A stretch of DNA of 63,704 nucleotides, filler included, from Sluysia triapertura (lineage: Eukaryota): the NCBI GenBank assembly GCA_046118255.1. It is 5 parts of 5 records of this genome, joined end to end, with 100 filler letters (N's around TTAATTAATTAA, not from the genome) between each part and the next. Parts side by side here need not be neighbours in the genome. Positions count along the whole stretch, not along the records: positions 11,449 to 23,870 come from JBJNIA010111312.1; 4 more parts are not named here. One strand, 5' to 3'. Below are positions 1-23,870 of the stretch, piece after piece. Under the pieces are notes generated by a model. That model worked only from the letters and a program-made list of their open reading frames with translations. It searched no databases and was not told where the DNA came from. A program made the position numbers and the translations under genes. The first letter of the stretch is position 1; the number at the start of each line of letters is the position of its first letter.

Positions 1-2851
1 AATAAATAAAAATTATTTAATTTTAAATTATTTATTAAATATTAGTTGTTGAAAAAATGCCGAAAGAAAAACCACGATTTTATGATCTCACGAAGTACTA
101 TAGGATTGTTCTATTATCCTTAATTATCCTTATTTAGCGAACTTCCGAATCTCAGATAATTTTTACAGCTATCGTTAATTTAGATTCCATGTTTGACAGT
201 TCGTATTGAGTTATTATTTCAAACAATTTAGTACACAAGTATGCAATGTTATTTATTGAGTAATTGATTTATTTACTGTGATAAAATCCATCCCAAGAAT
301 GATCAACAGTGATTTTACTCATCTTTTCAGTGTTTATCTATTAGTCGTTTCTTTTAGTCCAATTGAAATGTTTTTCTGTGTGAATTATTTTTGTTATTAA
401 TACAACTGAAATTAAAAACTAATTACTAAAAATTTAATAAAATTATTATTATCGTTGCGATAGCTGTATAAAAATCACAATAAATCAATAGTTGGTGAAA
501 TTATATTTAATTTTTTATTTTTAAAAATTATTAAAATAGTCAAAAACTCGTATAATTAATGATATAATTAAAAATAATAACCATAAAATATGAAATATAA
601 TGTATTAAAATTGATATTAAAAGCAAGACATTAAATTAAATAATAAATAATCGATAAGCTTTTTACTCAATGCAGTGTATGTTGTATTTTGCAATCATTC
701 CGTATACAATGATGAATTATTTTAGTTTATTATATTATTATTATTATTATTTCCAAAAAATGAATCAGTTGTTTAAGTTATATTATACATACTTTGCAGC
801 ATTTATTAGTTCATATCAAAATTGCATTAGTTTTTCTTTATTTTAAACAAGTTTAATATTGATATTTAATGTTAAAATTATATATATATATATATTTAAT
901 ACTTAAATACAGAATAATTTGTATTGGTTAAAAATATTTTGTAGTAAAATTTTTATAATTATACAGTAAAGAGATAAGATCACTGGAACATGTACACATT
1001 TTCTAATGAACTAACAATTTATCATAAATTCAAGATTTTATACTGGTTTTTGAAATACTACTTTATTTTGCTATTTCAATTTGAAAATATTTAGATGAAG
1101 AAACATTAAATATTCTCTCTACATATATATATATATGAACAAAAATGTAAATTCAGTGCACTCTGAGGTCAGTATTACAATTTTCTATTATTTCTTAATT
1201 ACTAGTTTTTTCCTTGATTCGTGGTATTTGCAAAAATAAATTTATCAGACATTATTATTGTCTGTAATCATAATGAAAACGTGAATTTTATTGAATATAT
1301 AATGTTGATCTTTTACTCTACTACGTATTTATTTATTTATACGTATTATTTTTTTCTTTAATCTGAGAAAGGTTTTCTACATTAAAAATTTACTTCTTCT
1401 ACATAGAAAATCAATATTAAAATAACAAACTATTTTAAAAATTTATAATATTGTGTCGTCTTGGTAGTAAGCTGTTTAGAAAGTGTTTACAAATTTTGAG
1501 TTGAAAAATACTGTTTTCTCTTTTTATAAGGATAACGTTTTCCCTTAAATGATGGAATCATGTTCACGATGAAATAGAAGAAAAATTAAAATAGATTATC
1601 GAATTGTCGACAGTATTGTTTCTTACTGAAACCGGATATTCCGTTTTTAAAATTCTTTGAGCTACAAATTATTTTCGTATATTTTTTCTTGGCTGCAAAA
1701 CTCAAATGTAACAGAATTACTCAACGAGTTAAATCGAAAAAAGTTCTCGTGTTCTGGAAACTAATTTAATCGCGGCGTTAAAAAAATATTGTTGTACATC
1801 TTGAAATTATTATCTCGATTATTATTGGTTAAAAATAAATAGTTGTACTTATAAAATGCCACAAATATTTGCTAAACATCTGAAATAATTATTGTAAAGT
1901 ATTGTTTTTAAAGATTGAAATATACTTGTTAAATATAGTCAACTGTGCAATTGTTTAAACATAATTTACTACTGAAATACATAATTGACAGTAGTACATT
2001 TATACAAATTATAAAAGTGATAGATTTATAAGTATATCACAATTTCTAATTATCTATATTTATAACAATCAGAAATTAATAAATATTAATTATTTTTCGT
2101 GTAGTAGTTTGAATTAAAAATTTCATTTTGTTTAAAACCTATGACGATTTTTCACTTATAATTTCTTGGATCTCTTATAATACAATTTCTTTAATACAAT
2201 TTTCATTACAATGTTCTAGTCATTGTAATAATGCTTAAAAATAATAAAGATATTCGTTAAGCAGTCAATATATAAGTGCTGTAACTAAATTTTGAAATAA
2301 AATCTAGTAATCAATAAATAATTTTATAAATTAATTAACAATATAATAGAGTCTATTTTCTTACTATTATGTAAATATTTTTAATAAATATTAACGATAT
2401 TGTTTTGTGATGACAACAGTTTGAAGACATTGCCATAAACTTTTTCAGATTGAACTATGTTTTCCATTAAAAATGTTTATCATAATGAAACAAATGTTGG
2501 CTATTTGTCTATAGGGTAGCCGTCGTAATATTTTCGCGGAAGTTTACAGTCTTTTGCGGAATTTATTCTAAAAAGATTTATAATTTTTTGATGTTCATAA
2601 ACAAAATATTTATAAATTTGCAAAATACTTGTATCATTTGATTTTATTTGACAAAGTACTAATTGTTTTGTTTTACTACGTGTATTATTATTACTATTAT
2701 TATTAGACTTTCAATAATAAAATGTTTTAATTTTTGATGATTTTGTTTTAATATTATATTTTCATTTAGTTATTGTTTTTATATTTAATTTAAAATAACA
2801 TTTTTGGTAAATATATATAAAAGTTTTTCTGTTTTTTATTACTTAACATTG

Positions 2852-10590: not shown

Positions 10591-11270
10591 TTAATTGGAA
10601 TTTTATAAACTACTATTTCAAATCTTAAAAAATCCACTCTCCAAAATATTCACAAAATAAATGCAACTACAGACTATAAAAAATGTTATAAATTTGTTAT
10701 TTATTTTAATTTTAAGAAATATAATATATGCAGCGAAGTTTATTCGCAATCGAACAATTCGAAGTATTGTTTACCAAAATTGTTTAATAATTCGTATCAA
10801 AATGAAATTAGAAGATAAAATAAATGTTAAAAGTGTTATTTATATATTACATTTTATAATTTTTCTACATACATAATTTTATTCATGATTTATTATTTTT
10901 ATGCATTCATTGCTTTAATTATTAACGAAATTAAAAAAATTAATTTATTTTAATATATTACTTACAAAATTTGTTTGTTTGTTAAAATTAGTTATTCATT
11001 GAAAAACTGTAATAAAATTACTCTTCAAATTCAACAAGCATTATCATACAATTTTTATTATTAATTTGCAGTTCACAATTTATCGTACAATCAGTTCCAC
11101 ATGTAACCTTGCAACCTTCTCATTAAAATTTATTAACATAATAACATTTTCATTTATATCTACTGCTTACAATGATAGAAATTATTCAGAATGCAGCATC
11201 TGTTCAGTAAATAGTTCTATTGTGATACATAGTCTATATTGGTTCATCATTATTCCTATTTTTATGGCTC

Positions 11271-11448: not shown

Positions 11449-11519
11449 ATTTGTGTAGCACATAAAATTATAGTAAAATTTCTCGTAATTTTATTCAGCG
11501 GTTCATATTATTAAGCTTA

Positions 11520-11582
<63 letters not shown>

Positions 11583-12041
11583 GATTATGTAAGAATATCT
11601 TAAACTAAATAAAAATTATTTTATAAAATTTGATAAAAAAACCAATTGTGCCGATCGTTGTATTGAGGTATATGCTTAAAAAATGTCATTTAAAGAAATT
11701 TTATAATTGATAATAGCGGATGGCTCTACAGTAAGAGCCTTGGTTCTTTTTACGAAGTCTAACAATTTGTAAAATAGATAACATTTAGATGTCAAACCAA
11801 CTCTTCTTTATCTTCTATGGTACACTAGTTACATTTTATACATCGTATTGCTACAGTAAAGATTTCTTATTGTTTCACTTATTACTATTCATTATTATTC
11901 CACTTATTTAGTGTATTTTTTTAATTATTTCAGATCCAATTATTATTTACCGAAACATTTTACGAAGGAGATTTAGCTTATCAAGTATTTTGTATTTCTG
12001 AACCTCTAATTGGCAGATCGTGTGGTTATTATTATTATTAA

Positions 12042-12088
<47 letters not shown>

Positions 12089-12125
12089 TGTGCGGTTAAT
12101 TTTATGCATTTTTTAAACCTTTGTA

Positions 12126-12652
12126 CAGTGGTGGCCAAATTATTAGACTAAAACATGAAAAATATGTTTCTCGATGATAATGGCCTGGAAACTCTCCAGA
12201 CATGGATCCCATAGAAAATCTGTCAGAGATTGTCAAAAGGAGAGTTTCTACCTATAAACCAACCACCAGGACGGAACTTATTGAAACTATGATAAAAGTA
12301 TGGCATCACGATGACAAGATCAAAGACGTATGCCCCAAACTCATCCGTGGCATACGGATCAAGAAATTATTGGATAACAAAGGATGGCAAACAAAGCACT
12401 AATACAACAGTTTGTACATATTTGATTTGTAGTAAATTGTGTTATTATTCTACATGAATAAAATTTATGTATGTTTTGCGTTTCAGTATTTTTATCTATT
12501 ATTTTACTTTCACTGACTACTTTTTGGAGAAAGTAGTTATTTTCCAACATTTTACATATTCTATAAGTGTCATGTATTTATACACTTTTGATTAATAGTA
12601 TCCTTGAAAAATGTTGAATTTTATCACAAAAATGGTCTTTAGTCTAATAATT
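12126..12652 (+). mobile_element. Internally deleted Tc1-like DNA transposon
   Basis: TA|CAGTGGTGGCCAAATTATTAGACT left TIR and partial complement AGTCTAATAATT at 12641. Transposase remnant WPGNSPDMDPIENLSEIVKRRV matches the Tc1 WPxxSPDLNPIENLW motif. Confidence 0.85.
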
Positions 12653-14310: not shown

Positions 14311-14773
14311 TATTAGGTTCAGTTTTTTACAATTATGAAAAGTGCATACTGATCAAGAATTCTAAATAACAAAATGAATTTATTAAATCATTAGAAAAAA
14401 CAAATATCAGAGTCTCAATAGGTGCGATATTCTCCACCACAATCGATCACTTCCTTGGTGAGTTTTGATCGAAAAATTCTTCAATCCATGTTGTTATTGC
14501 TTCTTCGTTCTCCATAAATGCAACAAAGCATTCTGGTCGCTTCTGTAGCTTTTAAATGTTGATTAAAATAGAAAAGGAGTAGATGCCGGTAATGTTCATT
14601 GTTATCCTCCTGACACTCCATTTTAATGACGGTAATGATAATGAAAGGTAGTCTAAAATGATTTAAATAGATAATTCAGCTGAATGAATATAACTAAAAT
14701 CAGTTAAAACAAGAAGTTGGTGTGTTTTCTTTGCAACAAATAAAATCGCACAAATTTATGCACCAACCCAATA
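14311..14773 (-). mobile_element. Internally deleted mariner element
   Basis: TIR TATTGGGTTGGTGCATAAATTTGTGCG on the minus strand from 14773. N-terminus MECQEDNNEHYRHLLLFYFNQHLKATEATRMLCCIYGE (ATG at 14621) is fused to C-terminal remnants ...TWIEEFFDQ...VIDCGGEY. Confidence 0.85.
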
Positions 14774-16273: not shown

Positions 16274-16462
16274 GTAATGCTTTATATTTCCATTTTTCTA
16301 AAATCGCATGTATTTTCATTCTGATTCTTTTGTTTAATCTGTAACTTTCCCTATTTGTTATTTAAGTATAGTGAGATGCGTTTGATATTTTTGTATTCGA
16401 TTTTTTCTTAATTTCAGAACTTTTCAGCTGTTTCTTTTGAAGTTATTGTAAATAAAAAGAAA

Positions 16463-16523
<61 letters not shown>

Positions 16524-16966
16524 TAGATAAATGTTTCTAAGCGAAATGAAAATGTTCAAAGTAGTCTAAAATTAGCCCTTGAAGTAATTTTTGTGCTACT
16601 TTTTGATAATTATTTATCACAATAATCTTTTTATCATTAGTGTTAAAAAACCGTGACTTGAGCATGAAAAATACAATTTTTATCCCACCACCAAAACTGA
16701 CCACTAAATTATGCTTCTGAATATGTTGCCAAAAATGAAACATAATTATAAACAAAATAGCATCTTTAGAAAAAATAAAATATATAAACACTGAAAACTA
16801 GAATTAAGAGTTACTTAACTTGGAATGTATGACTTAATACTTAATTCTTAAAAGGTATTGTTCGGGCGTTACATACATACCTTAGTTACACAAAGGTTTT
16901 TTATTAGGTGATATTTTTTAAGGATTAATAAATTTATATTTAACAAAAAAGTTAAGTTATTAATCT

Positions 16967-17200
16967 TTAATCCATTTAAATTTCATGTTTTTTTATCCAC
17001 AATCTACTATATTTTTGCAAAAAGAGTTTTAGGTTTAAATGGGTTAACCTTTAAATGTATCATTTCATTGCGGGGAAAAATAGCCAATTTAACCTTTTGA
17101 GATCCACTGACCAGTTCTATTGAACATGTTTTTAAGGGCTCTTTCTAAATTTATTTTAAATTATTTCTTTCTAAAATTAACTTGGACTCCAAAGGGTTAA
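16967..17200. mobile_element. Two small TTAA-flanked piggyBac-type MITEs (16967-17047, 17089-17200)
   Basis: TTAATCCATTTAAA...TTTAAATGGGTTAA and TTAACCTTTTGAGATCCA...TGGACTCCAAAGGGTTAA imperfect terminal inverted repeats. Confidence 0.6.
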
Positions 17201-17246
17201 ATTTTAATGCAATAGTTTTTTATTTTGATTGAATTATTAATTTTAG

Positions 17247-17389
17247 ATGTATATAACTCATCAGTTGTATAATAGTTTATTTTACGCATTAACCGATGTA
17301 GCTGCAGATAAAGACATGGAAGTCAACTTAGCAACTAGAAGATTTCAGCATATTTGTGCGTCGAAGTCAGGAATTCGATTTGATGTGTG
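17247..17389 (+). CDS. ANKRD27: ANKRD27/VARP internal exon (pre-VPS9 helical region)
   Basis: ttttag|MYITHQLYNSLFYALTDVAADKDMEVNLATRRFQHICASKSGIRFDV|gtgagt. Aligns with recalled human VARP IYVHHEIYNLIF...EDAAFNKITRSLQ. Phase 2 end matches the next exon. Confidence 0.85.
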
Positions 17390-18082
17390 GTGAGTTGCTT
17401 GTTTTTATTAGAACATTTCTGAGTATCTTAAAAACAATTAAACATTCCTAACTCTTATATCTTGTTTATATATACCATACTACCAATTATGACTGACAAC
17501 TACGTAGTAGGAGATATCGAATATGTGGATTTAAAAATATCTTGCCTTATGTCTTGATCAAAACTATGTATCCATTAAAGTTATATTATTAAATAATCAT
17601 TTTATCAGCACCTTCAAATAAGTAGGTAGTCTGAAAATTCTACCCTATTGAAACTTCTATTTTCTAGTTTTATATCGTTTGCTATTTTTATCCTTACCAA
17701 ACTAAATTAAGGTATTTATCATTTTTAAATTTCTTACTTTTCCATATATATTTAATGATTAAACATTATATATTAAATTAAGTTGCTATTCCATTGTTTA
17801 ATGATGATAGCTATTTCTATACTTGAATTTTTCTTTAATCAAAACGAGGTTGACTTTTAAACTTGATTAATACTATTTCATAACACACTTATAAGATAAA
17901 TATACGTTGAATAAAATTTAACAATTATGATCAAATACAAATGTAAAATTTCATAACATCTGTACGGCTTAATTTCTTAGTATTTAAATTTTATTTATAA
18001 CTTAAATATTTGCAACATTGCATTTCAAATTCTTAAATTATATAAAATAAGGTAAACCATATAAAAACGAATTTTTTGTTAG

Positions 18083-18216
18083 TGAAAATATGCCTCGAGC
18101 GCGTAAAGAATTGTTAATGATTCGTTATGCTACAACTCCAATCGGTATTTCAGAATGCCTTCGTAAAACAATAGCAGAATTAAGTTATCTAAAGAAAACA
18201 TCCAATGATAAAAGTG
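18083..18216 (+). CDS. ANKRD27: ANKRD27/VARP exon, VPS9 domain
   Basis: ENMPRARKELLMIRYATTPIGISECLRKTIAEL versus human NIPRAKRELAQLNKCTSPQQKLVCLRKVV. Followed by a 35-nt GT-AG intron. Confidence 0.9.
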
Positions 18217-18251
18217 GTTAATGCTTTTTAATTTGATTTATGGTTATTTAG

Positions 18252-18360
18252 ATTCGAACACATTAAATAAAGATTCTTTAAGACAAACAATAATGGTAAC
18301 TAGTGATGATTTATTAAGTGCTTTGATATTCCTAATAATAAAATCCAATATTCCAAATTG
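18252..18360 (+). CDS. ANKRD27: ANKRD27/VARP exon, VPS9 catalytic Asp region
   Basis: MVTSDDLLSALIFLIIKSNIPNW versus human TMCADDLLSVLLYLLVKTEIPNW. Followed by a 37-nt intron. Confidence 0.92.
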
Positions 18361-18397
18361 GTTAATTTTTATTAACTATTTTAATTTTATTGTGTAG

Positions 18398-18463
18398 GTT
18401 CACTTATTTAGAATATGGTGTAAATTTTCATTTTGCAGCTTGTTCAAGAGATGATGAATATCA
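18398..18463 (+). CDS. ANKRD27: ANKRD27/VARP exon, VPS9 domain
   Basis: FTYLEYGVNFHFAACSRDDEY versus MANLSYIKNFRFSSLAKDEL. Splice sites tgtag / gtaagt, phases consistent. Confidence 0.88.
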
Positions 18464-18624
18464 GTAAGTTTTTGTTTTCATAAAATTTTATTTTAGAATA
18501 ACGTCATCTTAAAATTACACAATTCCTTATTTTATGTAATTTTTTTTGTTTAAATATTAAAATTAATGATTTTTTTAAAATTTTAAATTAGTGTGACTAT
18601 TTTATAAAATTTGTAAAATTTTAT

Positions 18625-18690
18625 TTCCATAATGATGGTTTCTGACATCTCTTCTGAAATGAGATGATATTATTTTAACTGAATATGGAA
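18625..18690 (+). ncRNA. Box C/D snoRNA, SNORD60/snR48-type (28S G in GAGGUGUCAGAAAAG)
   Basis: Perfect 7-bp terminal stem TTCCATA/TATGGAA; C ATGATGG 18632; D' CTGA 18654; C' ATGATAT 18664; D CTGA 18679. The D' guide TTTCTGACATCTCTT is antisense to conserved LSU rRNA (A)GAGGUGUCAGAAA. The +5 rule lands on the G equivalent to yeast Gm2793, in the same register as the recalled human U60 guide TTCTGACACCTCGT-ATGA. Confidence 0.85.
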
Positions 18691-18702
18691 TATATGCAAA
18701 TT

Positions 18703-18778
18703 TTAAACAGTTAATGATTACACTTCGCCCCTTTATGATAAAGGTGATTTGTGATTAGTCTAAATGAAGCCTGTTTAA
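18703..18778 (+). ncRNA. Box C/D snoRNA, SNORD80/snR60-type guide, copy 1
   Basis: Stem TTAAACAG/CTGTTTAA; C ATGATTA; D' ATGA preceded by TTCGCCCCTTT (antisense to LSU AGGGGCGAA; +5 is the yeast Gm908 equivalent); C' GTGATTT; D ATGA preceded by GATTAGTCTAA (antisense to AGACUAAUC). Confidence 0.85.
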
Positions 18779-18851
18779 TAATGCATAATTTGTTAAATGT
18801 GTTTGGAAAACTCTTGATTTAAGTTGATGTTTTATATTCAAGAAAGCACGT

Positions 18852-18920
18852 ACAAGCTAATGATTAAATTTCGCCCCTTTATGATAAAGGTGATTTATGA
18901 TTAGTCTAAATGAAGCTTGT
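18852..18920 (+). ncRNA. Box C/D snoRNA, SNORD80/snR60-type guide, copy 2
   Basis: Stem ACAAGCT/AGCTTGT; same boxes and both guides as copy 1 (D' guide TTTCGCCCCT). Confidence 0.85.
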
Positions 18921-19005
18921 TTAATATTATTAATTTGCAATATAGAGATTTCAGATCTCTTCGATTTGAGCCTGACCTTTTATAATTAAGGTAACATTCT
19001 ATTGT

Positions 19006-19076
19006 AACAAGCTAATGATTAAATTTCGCCCCTTTATGATAAGGGTGATATGTGATTAGTCTAACTGAAGCTTGTT
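19006..19076 (+). ncRNA. Box C/D snoRNA, SNORD80/snR60-type guide, copy 3
   Basis: Stem AACAAGCT/AGCTTGTT; C ATGATTA, D' ATGA, C' GTGATAT, canonical D CTGA at 19065; both guides intact. Confidence 0.85.
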
Positions 19077-19257
19077 TATTAAATAAAATAATTTATAAAA
19101 TTTATCCTCTGTATATGGTTTAGTTAAGTTCGATGTGTCTGTCAATAACGGTACAATATTTATGAAAACCGGCTTTTTGTCATTGAGGTTTTGCATATAA
19201 TTAAGTTCATTATTTTTTATTAGATCTAGTATAAATTGATATTTAAAATGCTTTTAG

Positions 19258-19471
19258 ATTTTATTTGACAACTCTGGAAGCTGCACTAGAGCATATTCGG
19301 AGTTTACCAAATCAAGACAGAACAACAGACATATTAGATGAGATTAATGAATCTGATGCTTATTGCAATCAATTGTTAAATGATGACATTAATGATACTA
19401 AATTAATTGATGATAGTCGATTCGGAGCAGCAGTTGCATATCATTTTAAGCAAACGAAACATTTATTTCAA
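19258..19471 (+). CDS. ANKRD27: ANKRD27/VARP exon, end of VPS9 domain
   Basis: cttttag|(Q)FYLTTLEAALEHIRS...QTKHLFQ|gtaatt versus human GYCLTSFEAAIEYIR...TDCLFK. Confidence 0.88.
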
Positions 19472-19699
19472 GTAATTTGTATTTCTTAAAGTATAAATTA
19501 CGTCACTTTAATAAAATAAATTAAAATTTATATTGTTTTTTGGTCATATTTATGATATGCAAGAATAAAAATAAAAACCGTATTGAAGATATCTACTGTC
19601 TATCTATTTATTGATTAGTCTATTAATTAATATAATCAATCAGTCCGTTCCATTTCTGAAAAATCTGTATATCGAATAAATATAATTGTTTAATTTTAA

Positions 19700-21750
19700 A
19701 ATGTTATTTATACGGGGATTGATAGTGGCACTTTATTTATAATTCTAATTTAAAAAACAACAAATGAGTCTAACATTTCTTATGAATCGCATTCGATTTC
19801 AAGTAAAACTATTGTAGAATCTATTTTAAAATCAATTTTATTATATATTATGAAAAATAGTGTTTTCAAGTAGACAATGTAATATTTTATTGTGATGGAT
19901 TTAATATTAGGTATTAGTTTTTTACATTCACATTTTCTTGTAATGTAGGAATATGTAATTGTCTTTAACTTGCCAAACAAAACAAAAGTGAATCATTAAT
20001 AAATTTGTTTCTTTAATAAAGGAAAAAATGCAATTAATAGAAAAGAAATTACCGTGCCAAAATGAATTGGAATATCCTAAACTGTAAGATTTAAAATCTC
20101 GAAGAGAAGCAAACTTTATTCGTTTTTACCATTTTTATTGAATTAGTTTGTTACGAACGATTATTTTTAATTTTAACGTTTATTATTTAATTAATTTTTA
20201 TTTTTTCAATGATTATTTTTATTTCATCTATTCAGTTGTAATTGATGGCGCATTTATCGTATTGGAAATTGTTTAGTTTAATGTATGATTAAATTAATAT
20301 TTTATTTATATCTTCGTTTAAACAATATTTAGTATTGTTAGAATTTTGAAACGTATTTTTTTACTACTTTACCTTTGGTAAAGTTTTTCGTAATTTTTTT
20401 TTCGTAAGGTTTTTTATAGCCTATAGATTTGGCGGTTTGAGACATTTCCGCATTTGTATTATTCATTAGGTTAAATGGAATTTTATATTTTTTGGTGCTT
20501 AGTTATTTCTTTCTATTTAATTGATTCGAATTTCTCGATTGATAGTTTAGTGATTTTAGAGTTTACAGTCATCCAAGAAAGTAGATCTGATTATTTTATC
20601 TTTATTTGTAATGGTTATTCAAAAAGAAATTTTCTAGCTGGTTCTTGTTTGTCGAAAACGTATGAATTGAAATTTGTTCGAATTTAAAAGCATGAAAGGA
20701 ACTGATTAAAGTTATGGATAGCGTTCACGAGAATTGTACAGTTATCTCATGTGCAACATAATCTTCATTAAGGGGTGATTATATTTGGCCTTATGGTTAT
20801 TTTTGTGATTTTAAAAGATGGCCTAATATAACACAATTTGTTTCTATCTTGATATTATATCTAGCATTGTATTATATTTTATTAATTTTTCTTTTAAGTT
20901 CTTTATATACGTAATGTTTTGTTTTTTAAAGATATAATGACAATTCTAAAATATAAGGATAAAATTGTATTAGATAAATACATTTAAAAATTTAAGACTT
21001 AAAACAATAATGACAAAGATATTAGTTTTAAACTTTGTTTTAGCATGTTTGACCATTCTCCTCCACCAAAGCCCTTGCCGCACTTCTCGGTTCCTGTCGA
21101 AATATTTACAAACTAAATCAAGAATTAAATTATACGTAAAACTGATACTTACAAAATCGTTTTTTGACTCAGTTATGTTGTCGATATATTCAAGCTGCGA
21201 TTGTTCTGCTTGTAAGGGTTATGAACCGTGGTCTAATTGCATAAGATCGTTTCCATTATTTGTTGACATAACTTTACTAACTAATTTTTTGTGTATAAGA
21301 ATGTAACACTTCGGATCACTTGATTTACTAAGGGATTCCTTATTTCTTCTTGATGGATAATTTATGACTGAATTGGCCTTATTTTTAACTTTTATAATCG
21401 AGTTTATCATAATAGCATTAATGAGTTCGTAGTTTTCTGAGGAGTTGTCATCGGAAAATTGATAATTTATATTATGACATAAATCGTGTTTTGATTCCTT
21501 GATACTCTTTAATGTATTATTGAAATTGATCATATAATCATTTCTAGATTCTTCTTCAGAATTAGCATCCGTATCATTATGAATTCTATTATCATCGTCG
21601 ATATCATCATTGTTGTTTTTATTGCCATTAGTAGTGGTAGTATTTAAAGAACGATTAAGATTAGTATCAACACTTACAAAATGAGACCAACAAATCGATT
21701 TCTTCAAAAAAATGTTCAAAAATTAACAATTAAAACAAAGATAATTGAAA
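19700..21750 (-). mobile_element. Highly decayed retroelement-like sequence
   Basis: The broken Asn/Asp-rich ORF 21219-21719 continues past its stop. PLNEDYVAHEIT (about 20750) resembles PLMHFTVADIIT in the 60470 ORF. Weak protease-like DIPIHFG near 20060. Confidence 0.35.
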
Positions 21751-22098
21751 TACAATGTAATATATAAACAGTTACTGTATGATCATTGGATAATTTAAAA
21801 AGTACTAAAGTAATTTGTAATTTCAAGTATTTTTCTTCTTCATTATTAAAAGGTAATTCATTATTTTTGAAAATGTTCCATTCTTCTTTATAAAATAATA
21901 TTCAATAAGTGCTCATTATTAAAAAACTTCATTATCTCCAAAAGTTACTTTATTTACTTACTACTTTAAGTAACAAATAAGTAATAAAAAATAAAATAAA
22001 CATTATTCATGATTTCATTGTTTTTATATACAACCACAAAAAGGATTTAACACATTTTTGTAACGTTCATTTAACATATTTTAACTTTGTTTTTTTAG

Positions 22099-22574
22099 TA
22101 TCCAAAATTCTATTGCTTATATAAGGAGCCAATTAAAATTATTGTGGAGTTCTCGTATGATTCGTTCAATGTTTGATGAGCTTTATGATCAACCATTATT
22201 AGATGGTTATTCTGGTAATAAAACAACGTCACTAACTCAACCACTAGCACCGCAATCATCTAATAATGATGTAACCAATAAAAATCAAACTACCTCGCCT
22301 AATCATTCAAAATTAAGTAACAATAAAAAGCCCAATGCATCAATTGGTGTACCATTATTTAAATTACCTCGATTGGCTAACAGTGGATCTTTTTGGAAAA
22401 AGTTAAATTCCAAACTATCATTGGCTAATTTGACACCACATGTAAATCAACAGTCACCACCACCACCACCCACTGGTTCCATTTCGCAAATTCCATTATC
22501 GATCCAGTCGGTTTGTATGTTATATTTCTTTACAACCAGTTGTCTGTCACAAATTCGGGATGATGTATTGGCTG
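22099..22574 (+). CDS. UBE3B: UBE3B (HECT E3 ubiquitin ligase) internal exon
   Basis: tttttag|IQNSIAYIRSQLKLLWSSRMIRSMF...IQSVCMLYFFTTSCLSQIRDDVLAG|gtaaga versus recalled human [25 protein letters not shown]...[25 protein letters not shown], with a low-complexity insert between the blocks. Confidence 0.8.
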
Positions 22575-22875
22575 GTAAGAGCGGTTTATTATTTACAAAT
22601 AGTTATATGTATTTAATAATGATAGTTATAGTCTTACGTCTTTAAATTCTCCTCGAAGTCTCTTCTTCTCTTTGATAAGTTTTTCTTAATTGTGCTTTGT
22701 GTAAAAACTCATAATTTATTTATATTTTTTTAATTGTTTATTGTTTTTATAAATTCTAACCTTATCAATTACTTCTATTATTCTTTACTGAATTAACTTT
22801 AAAATCTGAATTATTAATCTAATGATTTTTGATCTAAATTAAATTTACTTTATAATTCTAGCTTAAATATGCTAC

Positions 22876-23500
22876 TTAACACGTTCGCTACCAGCGTCGC
22901 GTCTACCTTATCAGATTTCGATAATATGTTACAGTTAAAAAATCCGATGCCATTTAAAGTCATTCAGTTAATAAAGTTAACTGAAGAAGAGTCTCTGTTC
23001 CTAAAGATAGAAGTGTTAATCCAGAATCTTAGTGAAATGCTAATATAATATTTCCAATCTCTTTTTTATAACTTTTCAACAGATGGAAGACAAATAAAAT
23101 TAAAAGAAAAAACTTTTATTCAAATTAAACAATGCACCTACAAAGTATTTCCGCTGTTTTTGTATGATTTTACAAAAAAGATTATATACAACATTAATTT
23201 AAATCGAATAATTTATATAATTTACACTGGAATTCGAATAAGATATAATTCGTTTACCTTGATATCCTTCTACATTTTCCAATACTCTTCTGTTGATTGT
23301 TGTTTTGTCTTCTTGTGCGATAAACTTATCGAATATCGAATCTCTGAATGTTTTTAAATCTTTGCGCTCTTTTTCGTTTATTAATTTTCAGCAGATATAT
23401 AAAAATATTTATATATACCTGATGTATTATTAATGAATTTTCTGCGCATATTATATAATATTAATGTGATATGTTACTAATTTCCAGCGTCTACAATATA
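22876..23500 (-). mobile_element. piggyBac remnant (3' end)
   Basis: TTAACACGTTCGCTACCAGCG terminus; minus-strand fragments RRW, RRKFI and a Cys-rich tail. Confidence 0.45.
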
Positions 23501-23712
23501 TTAAATTTATATCAATTTTATAAAATTCTTTACTAATTTATTAATTTAATTTTGTCTAGCAGTATACGAGCTCCGTTAATATACAATTTTATTGGTATTA
23601 TATGGCTATCTTATATGACTCATCATTTTCATATTTACAAAGTTAAACTGATTCAAATGATTACGTAAACTTTTTTAGTAGTATAGTTTAATATTTCAGA
23701 ATTCATTGATAA

Positions 23713-23870
23713 TACAGTAGACTCCCGTATAACGCGAGTTTATACAACGCGTTAAAAAAAGTGCGACGACTTTATTGATATAACGCGATTCCCGTATAAC
23801 GCGGTATAGAATAAAATACGGGAATTTCCCTTTTAAACACTGTATAGATACATTTAATTTTTATGCACTC
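23713..23870. mobile_element. Tigger/pogo-type MITE end
   Basis: TA|CAGTAGACTCCCGTATAACGCG with internal repeats of ATAACGCG; truncated by the spacer. Confidence 0.6.

What the first reader, a model, noticed from the sequence alone, without database searches (positions are those of the whole stretch)
18625..19076. Polycistronic box C/D snoRNA cluster hidden in one ANKRD27 intron
Seen: four complete C/D units (terminal stem plus C, D', C', D boxes) packed into about 450 nt of a 794-nt intron, sense to the host, the first two only 12 nt apart. The guides are antisense to universally conserved LSU rRNA, and the +5 rule hits the known Gm sites of SNORD60/snR48 and SNORD80/snR60. Knowledge: animal intronic C/D snoRNAs are usually one per intron and released by exonucleolytic trimming; polycistronic units (plants, yeast) need endonucleolytic cleavage, and typical hosts are ribosome or translation genes rather than a Rab GEF. 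Inference: this lineage has an intronic polycistron-processing route and an unexpected host gene. The repeat-spacer pattern superficially mimics a CRISPR array.
Basis: partly seen in the sequence, partly recalled or inferred. Interest (0 to 1): 0.8.

Follow-up and report, generated by a model that had tools for sequence, protein, structure and literature searches.

The report
Intronic box C/D snoRNA gene cluster
One intron of a VARP-like Rab-GEF gene carries four small guide RNAs for ribosomal RNA methylation, one of one ancient family and three tandem copies of another; this layout is rare in animals but already described in flies, rice and green algae.

Summary
Intron 18464-19257 (794 nt) of a VPS9-domain, VARP/ANKRD27-like gene carries four sense-strand box C/D units.

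- **Not four different RNAs.** Unit 1 (18625-18690) belongs to the SNORD60/snR48/Me28S-G3255 clan. Units 2-4 are three tandem paralogues of SNORD80/snR60/DmSnR60 (Me28S-G1083). Each carries the same two guides, for the G1083- and A1092-equivalent sites.
- **Family assignment rests on guides.** All Rfam scores are below the gathering scores.
- **The boxes are imperfect.** No C box is fully canonical. All three D' boxes of units 2-4 are AUGA, and so is the terminal D box of units 2 and 3.
- **The copies look selected.** They are 88-95% identical, against 69% for their homologous spacers.
- **The cluster is lineage-specific.** The same intron in two distant relatives is short and has no snoRNA.

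Not shown: expression, discrete products, complementarity to the species' own 28S, and any processing route. No RNA run holds the locus.

Several snoRNAs in one intron ("intronic gene clusters") are already described in rice, Drosophila and Chlamydomonas. Movement of snoRNAs between broadly expressed host genes is also documented. Verdict: real, ordinary in function, mildly unusual in layout; a new member of a known kind.

The parts
18398..18463 (+). Host exon upstream of the snoRNA intron. It encodes FTYLEYGVNFHFAACSRDDEY plus the first two bases of the next codon, within the VPS9 domain.
   Evidence: tblastn/tblastx to P0001 and L001. The donor GTAAGT starts at 18464.
18464..19257 (+). Host intron of 794 nt, phase 2, carrying the cluster.
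   Evidence: GTAAGT...TTTTAG. The same intron position and phase occur in L001 and L002. Pfam VPS9 profile positions 39-71 and 86-102 fall on the exon ORFs 18212-18394 and 19247-19486 on either side of it.
18625..18690 (+). Unit 1, a box C/D snoRNA of the SNORD60/snR48/Me28S-G3255 clan. Stem 18625-31 / 18684-90; C AUGAUGG 18632-38; guide 18639-53; D' CUGA 18654-57; degenerate C' near 18664-70; D CUGA 18679-82.
   Evidence: Rfam RF00527 at 26.9 bits (gathering score 44), with the 14-nt guide identical to the family consensus. 7-bp terminal stem. Guide unique in the window.
18704..18777 (+). Unit 2, SNORD80/snR60/DmSnR60-like paralogue. C AUGAUUA 18714-20; D' guide TTCGCCCCTTT 18724-34; D' AUGA 18735-38; D guide GATTAGTCTAA 18753-63; D AUGA 18764-67.
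   Evidence: Rfam RF00528 at 16.5 bits. Repeat family D1. Fold z-score -3.4. Pattern match.
18778..18851 (+). Spacer between units 2 and 3, homologous to the next spacer but much more diverged.
   Evidence: 48 of 70 aligned positions identical; no shuffle out of 500 reached the score.
18852..18920 (+). Unit 3, SNORD80/snR60-like paralogue. C AUGAUUA 18860-66; D' AUGA 18881-84; D AUGA 18910-13; same two guides as unit 2.
   Evidence: Rfam RF00528 at 22.2 bits..
18921..19005 (+). Spacer between units 3 and 4.
19006..19076 (+). Unit 4, SNORD80/snR60-like paralogue and the only one of the three with a canonical terminal D box. C AUGAUUA 19015-21; D' AUGA 19036-39; D CUGA 19065-68; 8-bp stem.
   Evidence: Rfam RF00528 at 24.5 bits, E 0.062, with both guides aligned to the consensus. 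Fold z-score -3.0..
19258..19470 (+). Host exon downstream of the intron, encoding FYLTTLEAALEHIRSLP... (end of the VPS9 domain). The 3' limit is approximate.
   Evidence: 55-62% identity to P0001 / L001. (VPS9 profile positions 86-102).

Best explanation
This is an intronic gene cluster of box C/D snoRNAs that guide 2'-O-methylation of large-subunit rRNA.

Unit 1 is the local member of the SNORD60/snR48/Me28S-G3255 clan. Its D' guide should place a methyl group on the conserved G of that clan's target region (helix 88 area).

Units 2-4 are three tandem duplicates of the SNORD80/snR60/DmSnR60 snoRNA. Their D' guide selects the G equivalent to Drosophila G1083 (human G1612). Their D guide selects the A nine nucleotides downstream (Drosophila A1092).

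The cluster arose by insertion into an ancient intron of a VARP-like VPS9 gene, followed by tandem duplication of a ~150-nt segment (snoRNA plus spacer). The snoRNA parts have since been kept by purifying selection.

Inferred, not shown: the RNAs are made from the host pre-mRNA. snoRNP proteins assemble on each long terminal stem plus k-turn independently of the 3' splice site. The units are then separated by endonucleolytic cuts in the spacers and trimmed by exonucleases up to the snoRNP.
For: Guides:
- The 14-nt guide of unit 1 is identical to the Rfam Me28S-G3255 consensus, and both guides of units 2-4 align to the Me28S-Gm1083 consensus in the same order.
- The chance expectation for these guides is 0.01 and 0.00.
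- Applying the +5 rule to the two abutting targets of units 2-4 puts the G and the A 9 nt apart. That is the G1083/A1092 spacing of DmSnR60 (PMC1821038) and G1108/A1117 in the revised numbering (10.1101/2023.05.25.542231).
- snR48 (RF00471) is in clan CL00066 (PMC3511168), the clan cmscan reports for RF00527.

Structure: terminal stems of 7-8 bp in all four units; fold z-scores of -2.2 to -3.4 for units 2-4.

Selection: units are 88-95% identical, against 69% for their homologous spacers. Binomial P is 1e-4 to 6e-8. Guides and boxes are invariant among the three copies apart from D position 1.

Position: sense strand, inside an intron whose position is confirmed by two relatives.

Assembly: contigs of a genomic run at about 17x tile the region with 0-1 differences.
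Against: - No Rfam family reaches its gathering score. The best scores are 24-27 bits against cut-offs of 44-48.
- No C box is canonical (AUGAUGG, AUGAUUA). The terminal D box is AUGA in units 2 and 3.
- The stem II positions that Nop5/Nop58 contacts (last GA of box C, C of box D; PMC5389607) are altered in all three SNORD80-like copies, so their assembly efficiency is uncertain.
- No RNA run holds the locus. Expression, product sizes and processing are untested.
- The species' own 28S was not available.
- The units lie about 180-570 nt from the 3' splice site, far from the ~70 nt optimum reported for animal intronic C/D snoRNAs (PMC1821038).
Confidence: 0.7

Rival explanations
1. Only part of the cluster is functional. 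Unit 1 and unit 4 (canonical CUGA D box) are the working genes. Units 2 and 3, with an AUGA terminal D box, are decaying duplicates that are unstable or not assembled into snoRNPs.
For: The D box is AUGA in units 2 and 3 and CUGA only in unit 4. The C of box D is one of the few sequence-specific contacts of Nop5/Nop58 (PMC5389607). Rfam scores fall in the order unit 4 > 3 > 2. Twenty-five of the 37 annotated Drosophila C/D snoRNAs not detected as expressed are suspected to be falsely annotated or pseudogenes (10.1101/2023.05.25.542231).
Against: Units 2 and 3 keep both guides, the C box, D' and a terminal stem intact, while the spacers have diverged to 69%. In units 2 and 3, the A at D position 1 can pair with the U at C position 6, restoring a Watson-Crick pair in stem II that unit 4 lacks (inference from the stem II description in PMC5389607). 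AUGA is a working D' box in yeast U18 (PMC5389607).
Confidence: 0.2
2. The intron is trimmed only from its ends, as in mammals. The stable product would then be one long RNA capped by snoRNPs at both ends (a sno-lncRNA-like species spanning unit 1 to unit 4), not four discrete snoRNAs.
For: In mammals, two snoRNAs in one intron give a lncRNA with snoRNA ends after exonuclease trimming (Yin et al. 2012, as described in PMC4233238). Units 1 and 2 are only 13 nt apart, which leaves little room for a cut.
Against: The inner copies (units 2 and 3) are under the same constraint as the outer ones, which is not expected if only the end units matter. Intronic clusters in rice, Drosophila and Chlamydomonas are described as snoRNA gene clusters (PMC2780460; reference list of PMC5122169).
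Confidence: 0.1
3. The cluster is transcribed on its own from a promoter inside the intron, as a polycistronic snoRNA precursor, independently of host splicing.
For: The units lie far from the 3' splice site (about 180-570 nt), which argues against splicing-coupled assembly. Polycistronic precursors cut by RNase III-type enzymes are standard in plants (PMC5122169).
Against: No promoter evidence was sought or found. All units are in sense orientation to the host, as expected for co-transcription. Most animal snoRNAs come from host introns: 95% of expressed snoRNAs in Drosophila S2 cells (10.64898/2026.05.21.726978).
Confidence: 0.1
4. Chance resemblance in AT-rich intron sequence, with no RNA gene present.
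For: Box-plus-stem motifs with one mismatch are only weakly enriched over shuffles (2 found against 0.43 expected). Rfam E-values are individually weak. The two-guide pattern alone finds many chance hits in a very large metagenome collection.
Against: Exact rRNA-antisense guides sit at the correct places relative to the boxes, three times over, with expectations of 0.00-0.01 in this window. There is a strong conservation contrast between units and spacers.
Confidence: 0.03

Closest known systems
Drosophila DmSnR60 = snoRNA:Me28S-G1083a-d (Rfam RF00528); functional equivalents are yeast snR60 and human SNORD80 (U80)
   Same: It is a bifunctional C/D snoRNA with a D' guide UUCGCCCCU and a D guide GAUU(A/G)GUCU, aimed at two sites 9 nt apart in 28S (G1083 and A1092). 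It is present as several tandemly duplicated isoforms in introns of a protein-coding host (PMC1821038).
   Different: Drosophila has four copies, one per intron, each about 70 nt from a 3' splice site, with canonical UGAUGA/CUGA boxes, in Nop60B/mfl. Here there are three copies in one intron, 180-480 nt from the splice site, with AUGAUUA C boxes and AUGA D'/D boxes. The RNAs are shorter (69-74 nt against about 85 nt). The Rfam score is below the gathering score.
SNORD60 / yeast snR48 / Drosophila Me28S-G3255 (Rfam clan CL00066)
   Same: Unit 1 has the same 14-nt guide as the RF00527 consensus, directly upstream of a D' box. The clan link to snR48 is in PMC3511168.
   Different: It scores 26.9 bits against a cut-off of 44. 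It has a canonical CUGA D' box, unlike yeast snR48, whose odd 6-nt D' gives two methylations (PMC5389607). The second half of unit 1 has no recognisable guide.
Intronic snoRNA gene clusters of rice, Drosophila (mainly H/ACA) and Chlamydomonas
   Same: Several snoRNA genes lie in one intron, sense to the host, with short spacers (PMC2780460; references in PMC5932544 and PMC5122169).
   Different: This is a box C/D cluster in a different, unidentified AT-rich lineage. Homologous and heterologous members are mixed. Processing is unstudied.
Mammalian sno-lncRNAs (two snoRNAs in one intron)
   Same: More than one snoRNA lies in a single spliced intron (PMC4233238).
   Different: There the product is a long RNA with snoRNA ends. 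Here the inner copies are conserved as well, which suggests discrete snoRNAs.

Membership tests
Box C/D snoRNA | C box RUGAUGA near the 5' end and D box CUGA near the 3' end | tested here: inconclusive
   The UGAU core is present in all four units, but C is AUGAUGG (unit 1) or AUGAUUA (units 2-4). D is CUGA in units 1 and 4 and AUGA in units 2 and 3. The tandem G.A-forming GA dinucleotides are intact in every unit.
Box C/D snoRNA | Terminal stem bringing the C and D boxes together | tested here: met
   A 7-8 bp stem is in the minimum-free-energy structure of all four units.
Box C/D snoRNA | Guide of at least 10 nt complementary to rRNA, ending next to D or D', with the target at +5 | tested here: inconclusive
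   The guides are identical or near-identical to those of two Rfam families whose rRNA targets are published (PMC1821038). The species' own 28S was not available.
Box C/D snoRNA | Accumulates as a 60-100 nt RNA bound by fibrillarin, Nop56, Nop58 and Snu13 | not testable with these tools
   No RNA run holds the locus.
Rfam RF00528 snoMe28S-Gm1083 (SNORD80/snR60 function) | Score at or above the gathering score (48 bits) | tested here: not met
   24.5, 22.2 and 16.5 bits; no hit at the gathering score. The units are therefore filed as functional equivalents or distant orthologues, not as curated family members.
Rfam RF00528 snoMe28S-Gm1083 (SNORD80/snR60 function) | Two guides for the G1083- and A1092-equivalent sites, in D' then D order | tested here: met
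   The +5 positions are 9 nt apart when the two targets abut, as in PMC1821038.
Rfam clan CL00066 (SNORD60 / snR48 / Me28S-G3255) | Score at or above the gathering score of a member family (RF00527: 44 bits) | tested here: not met
   26.9 bits, E 0.63.
Rfam clan CL00066 (SNORD60 / snR48 / Me28S-G3255) | Clan guide sequence upstream of D' | tested here: met
   UUUCUGACAUCUCU is identical to the RF00527 consensus and is followed by U-CUGA.
Intronic snoRNA gene cluster | Two or more snoRNA genes within one intron, on the host strand | tested here: met
   The intron limits are set by splice signals and by alignment of both flanking exons to relatives. No RNA evidence excludes hidden alternative exons.
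ANKRD27 / VARP (host gene) | VPS9 domain | tested here: met
   Exon fragments hit Pfam VPS9 below the cut-off (E 0.001 and 0.059). They are 52-74% identical to VPS9 proteins P0001 and P0002. P0001 matches solved VPS9 domains.
ANKRD27 / VARP (host gene) | Ankyrin-repeat blocks downstream of the VPS9 domain | tested here: inconclusive
   None were found in 19490-23870. In the relative L001, an ankyrin-repeat gene model follows the VPS9 fragment 40 nt later. The repeats may lie beyond the piece.

The most novel reading that the evidence does not exclude
An animal lineage routinely releases several box C/D snoRNAs from a single spliced intron by endonucleolytic cleavage of very short spacers (13 nt between units 1 and 2). 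This would be a plant- or yeast-like polycistron pathway operating on intron lariats. It would also tolerate, or compensate by copy number for, a re-wired stem II (C box AUGAUUA paired with D box AUGA).
Probability: 0.3. Interest if true: 0.45.

Novelty: new member of a known kind. Interest (0 to 1): 0.3.

Why it matters
**Annotation.** It adds two ancient rRNA-methylation guide families (SNORD60/snR48-type and SNORD80/snR60-type) to an unannotated AT-rich genome.

**Evolution.** snoRNAs can settle in a membrane-traffic gene and expand there by tandem duplication. This fits the view that they drift between broadly expressed hosts.

**Mechanism.** The practical interest is a compact natural test case of four units, one 13-nt spacer, and variant C/D boxes with a possible U-A covariation in stem II. 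It could show how several snoRNPs are cut out of one intron and how much deviation stem II tolerates. None of this changes current understanding unless RNA data show an unusual processing route.

Tried and rejected
1. **Rfam at gathering scores.** Nothing in the piece or in L001. Only sub-threshold matches were usable.
2. **Expression.** The look-up of sequencing runs returned one run, not on record as RNA. Its contigs lie at an even ~17x over exons and introns alike, so it is genomic DNA and supports only the assembly.
3. **Relatives of the host.**
   - The word search with exon 19247-19486 found nothing.
   - The full scan with exon 18212-18394 found only two proteins.
   - Their loci L001 and L002/L003 are distant relatives without snoRNAs in the orthologous intron.
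   - No close relative was found, so conservation of the cluster within the lineage is untested.
4. **Two-guide pattern scan of metagenome contigs**. It returned 120 or more hits, nearly all without C or D boxes, i.e. chance matches in a huge collection. Only L095 looks like a canonical snR60/U80-type snoRNA. This was not useful for the window's lineage.
5. **Further copies of the units elsewhere in the piece.** None found.
6. **CRISPR-array reading.** Rejected: the sequence is a eukaryotic intron flanked by VPS9-domain coding exons, and the repeats have box C/D architecture and rRNA-antisense guides.
7. **Retroposed snoRNA pseudogenes.** Rejected: the spacers between copies are homologous, which points to tandem segmental duplication.
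9. **Papers not held.** Huang et al. 2005 (RNA) and Chen et al. 2008 (Genetics) could not be read. They are cited only through other papers' text and reference lists.
10. **Joined exon model.** Searches were made exon by exon.

Full report
**What is in the sequence**

The region is very AT-rich (21-31% G+C across the piece). Reading 18300-19400 shows a donor GTAAGT at 18464 and an acceptor TTTTAG ending at 19257.

The exon before it (18398-18463) encodes ...FHFAACSRDDEYQ. The exon after it (from 19258) encodes FYLTTLEAALEHIRSLP... Both align to a VPS9-domain protein of a relative. Pfam places VPS9 profile positions 39-71 and 86-102 on the exon ORFs either side of the intron, below the curated cut-off because the domain is split.

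Four units lie inside the intron on the host strand.

| Unit | Coordinates | C box | D' box | D box | Terminal stem |
|---|---|---|---|---|---|
| 1 | 18625-18690 | AUGAUGG | CUGA | CUGA | 7 bp (UUCCAUA / UAUGGAA) |
| 2 | 18704-18777 | AUGAUUA | AUGA | AUGA | 7 bp |
| 3 | 18852-18920 | AUGAUUA | AUGA | AUGA | 7 bp |
| 4 | 19006-19076 | AUGAUUA | AUGA | CUGA | 8 bp |

Unit 1 has a 15-nt guide, UUUCUGACAUCUCUU, directly before its D' box, and a degenerate C' box.

Units 2-4 are copies of one sequence, 83-87% identical over 82 nt in register and 88-95% over the units themselves. Each has the guide UUCGCCCCUUU before D', a GUGAU-type C' box, and the guide GAUUAGUCUAA before D.

All terminal stems appear in the minimum-free-energy folds. 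Units 2-4 fold better than shuffled sequence (z -2.2 to -3.4). Unit 1 does not (z -0.9).

**Is it more than chance?**

Box-plus-stem architecture alone is weak evidence in this composition.
- With a strictly canonical C box, my scanner finds nothing in the piece.
- With one mismatch allowed, it finds units 1 and 4, against 0.43 expected.
- With a mismatch also allowed in D, it finds 15 candidates against 6.9 expected.

The guides carry the weight.
- TTTCTGACATCTCT occurs once, against 0.01 expected.
- The ordered pair TTCGCCCCT...GATTAGTCT occurs three times, against 0.00 expected.

The same two-guide pattern returns many boxless chance hits in a collection of hundreds of millions of metagenome records. 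Its significance therefore holds only for a 12-kb window and together with the boxes.

**What the units are**

Rfam gives no match at gathering scores. At permissive thresholds:
- Unit 1 aligns end to end to snoMe28S-G3255 (RF00527, clan CL00066; 26.9 bits, E 0.63). The whole guide is identical to the consensus.
- Units 4, 3 and 2 align end to end to snoMe28S-Gm1083 (RF00528; 24.5, 22.2 and 16.5 bits). Both guides sit on the consensus guides.

RF00528 is DmSnR60. The published work shows a bifunctional snoRNA whose D' and D guides select G1083 and A1092 of Drosophila 28S. [quoted passage not shown] The revised fly map gives G1108 and A1117 for Me28S-G1083b (10.1101/2023.05.25.542231).

I applied the +5 rule to units 2-4.
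- The D' guide pairs C18730 (and its equivalents in units 3 and 4) with the second G of ...AGGGGCGAA.
- The D guide pairs a U with the second A of AGACUAAUC.
- If the two targets abut, as the reverse complements of the guides imply, the two sites are 9 nt apart. This matches the published pair and serves as an internal consistency check. It is not a test against this species' own 28S, which I could not obtain.

For unit 1, clan CL00066 also holds yeast snR48 (RF00471; PMC3511168). snR48 methylates G2791 and G2793 in helix 88 (PMC5389607). The +5 position is C18649, so the target is a G. The exact rRNA nucleotide is inferred, not verified.

**Evidence that the copies are maintained**

The spacers between units 2/3 and 3/4 are still alignable (48 of 70 identical; none of 500 shuffles reached the score). 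They are far more diverged than the units and contain indels. If the units had drifted like the spacers, identities of 65/74 to 69/73 would have probabilities of 1e-4 to 6e-8.

Differences among the copies avoid the guides and boxes, apart from D position 1. They fall in the terminal stem, where each copy still forms a stem, and in the linkers.

Homologous spacers also show that the copies arose by tandem duplication of a ~150-nt segment, not by retroposition.

**The unusual boxes**

The stem II region of the C/D motif normally comprises three non-Watson-Crick pairs and one or two Watson-Crick pairs. The only sequence-specific Nop5 (Nop56/58) contacts are to the C of box D and the last GA of box C (PMC5389607).
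- In units 2-4 the last GA of box C is UA.
- In units 2 and 3 the C of box D is A. This would pair with the U at C position 6, a possible covariation.
- Unit 4 keeps the C of box D but then has a U-C mismatch.

This reading is an inference from the published geometry. It means all three SNORD80-like copies deviate where Nop58 binds. They may assemble less well, and multiple copies could compensate, or units 2 and 3 may be decaying. An AUGA D' box is known to work in yeast U18 and to loosen the choice of the methylated nucleotide (PMC5389607), so +5/+6 ambiguity at the G site is possible.

**Host gene and relatives**

The most conserved exon found only two relatives among 1.84 billion representatives.

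P0001 (57% identical) lies on a 1.15-Mb NCBI contig. There the VPS9 gene model is followed 40 nt later, on the same strand, by a gene model full of ankyrin repeats. That is the VARP/ANKRD27 layout. P0001 also matches solved VPS9 domains of Rab5-family exchange factors.

No ankyrin repeat was found in the window piece downstream of the VPS9 exons. 'ANKRD27' therefore rests on the best relative, not on the window's own domain set.

In L001, and in a Tara metagenome scaffold (L002), the intron sits at the same codon and phase, just before F-[YF]-L-x-x-[LI]-E-A-A. It is only about 285 and 140 nt long and has no snoRNA. The intron is therefore old, and the snoRNA cluster is a later, lineage-specific arrival. 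This is what the 'constrained drift' picture of snoRNA mobility among broadly expressed hosts predicts (PMC3511168).

**How it probably works, and what is not shown**

- Shown: sequence architecture, guide identity, conservation contrast, intron location, and assembly support. Genomic contigs at ~17x tile 16533-20884 with 0-1 substituted letters per contig (the third carries two small deletions, at 19573 and 20384). They break only at the repeated units, as expected for k-mer assembly.
- Not shown: transcription, product size, protein binding, methylation, processing.

The units lie about 180 to 570 nt from the 3' splice site, well outside the ~70-nt position reported as optimal for splicing-coupled assembly (PMC1821038). 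Their stems are long. From general knowledge of snoRNP assembly, I infer splicing-independent assembly on each unit.

Exonucleases working from the intron ends can only free the outermost borders. Separate RNAs therefore need cuts in the spacers, as in plant and yeast polycistrons (PMC5122169), or alternative splicing that isolates units (PMC4233238). Otherwise the result would be one long RNA with snoRNP ends, as in mammalian sno-lncRNAs (PMC4233238). Conservation of the inner copies favours discrete snoRNAs.

**Comparison with what is known, and novelty**

Both snoRNA families are ancient and well known. Multi-copy DmSnR60 in a protein-coding host is known, but there it is one copy per intron (PMC1821038).

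[quoted passage not shown] For Drosophila H/ACA snoRNAs and for Chlamydomonas I cite it only through reference lists (PMC5932544, PMC5122169).

The finding is a new member of a known kind. What sets it apart is that it is a box C/D cluster, the spacer is very short, stem II is altered, and the host is a membrane-traffic gene. I score interest at 0.3.

All protein searches were exon by exon.

Noticed in passing
window 17794-17872 (+): The upstream host intron holds a weak box C/D-like element. It has a canonical AAUGAUGA C box, but both D-type boxes are UUGA. It scores below threshold for SNORD11 (25.6 bits) and SNORD36 (24.4 bits against a gathering score of 30). No terminal stem appears in the fold (z 0.14), and the guides do not match those families.
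   Followed up: partly
L002 928-995 (and L003 976-990): In the Tara-scaffold relative, the neighbouring intron of the same VARP-like gene has a C/D-like element: AUGAUGU, then 15 nt, CUGA, 6 nt, CUGA. Its last 15 nt (UAACUGAAUAUGGAA) are identical to the D box plus 3' stem of unit 1 (blastn E 0.002). It has no Rfam hit and a poor terminal stem. It may be a relic or relative of unit 1, or chance.
   Followed up: partly
window 20900-22000: This is a high-copy repeat. Summed contig depth in the genomic run rises from about 17 to several hundred and up to about 2600, with many variant letters. It includes a 167-aa stop-free frame on the minus strand (21222-21722) with no Pfam match.
   Followed up: no
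window 14484-14675 (-) and 12181-12399 (+): Mariner/Tc1-type transposase remnants lie upstream of the host exons: a Mos1 HTH_48 domain (E 4.7e-8) and a weak DDE_3 C-terminal piece (E 0.11).
   Followed up: no
window 18361-18397: A very short 37-nt intron splits the W codon after ...KSNIPNW. It sits at the same position as introns of about 270 nt and about 880 nt in L001 and L002. The gene thus mixes tiny and long introns.
   Followed up: partly
window 11489-11605, 12002-12148, 16412-16537: Long trinucleotide microsatellites read as poly-Leu, poly-Tyr or poly-Asn runs in different frames.
   Followed up: no
L095 about 595-670 (+): One metagenome contig carries what looks like a canonical snR60/U80-type snoRNA. 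It has GUGAUGA, then UUCGCCCCUAU-CUGA, then GAUUAGUCUUA-CUGA, i.e. the same two guides with consensus boxes. The organism is unknown.
   Followed up: no
L001 about 10960-11150: The orthologous intron in the NCBI relative is largely a tandem repeat of a ~19-nt unit (TCTATCTTCTCCAGATTC-like). A one-mismatch hit to the unit 1 guide occurs inside it and is chance.
   Followed up: no
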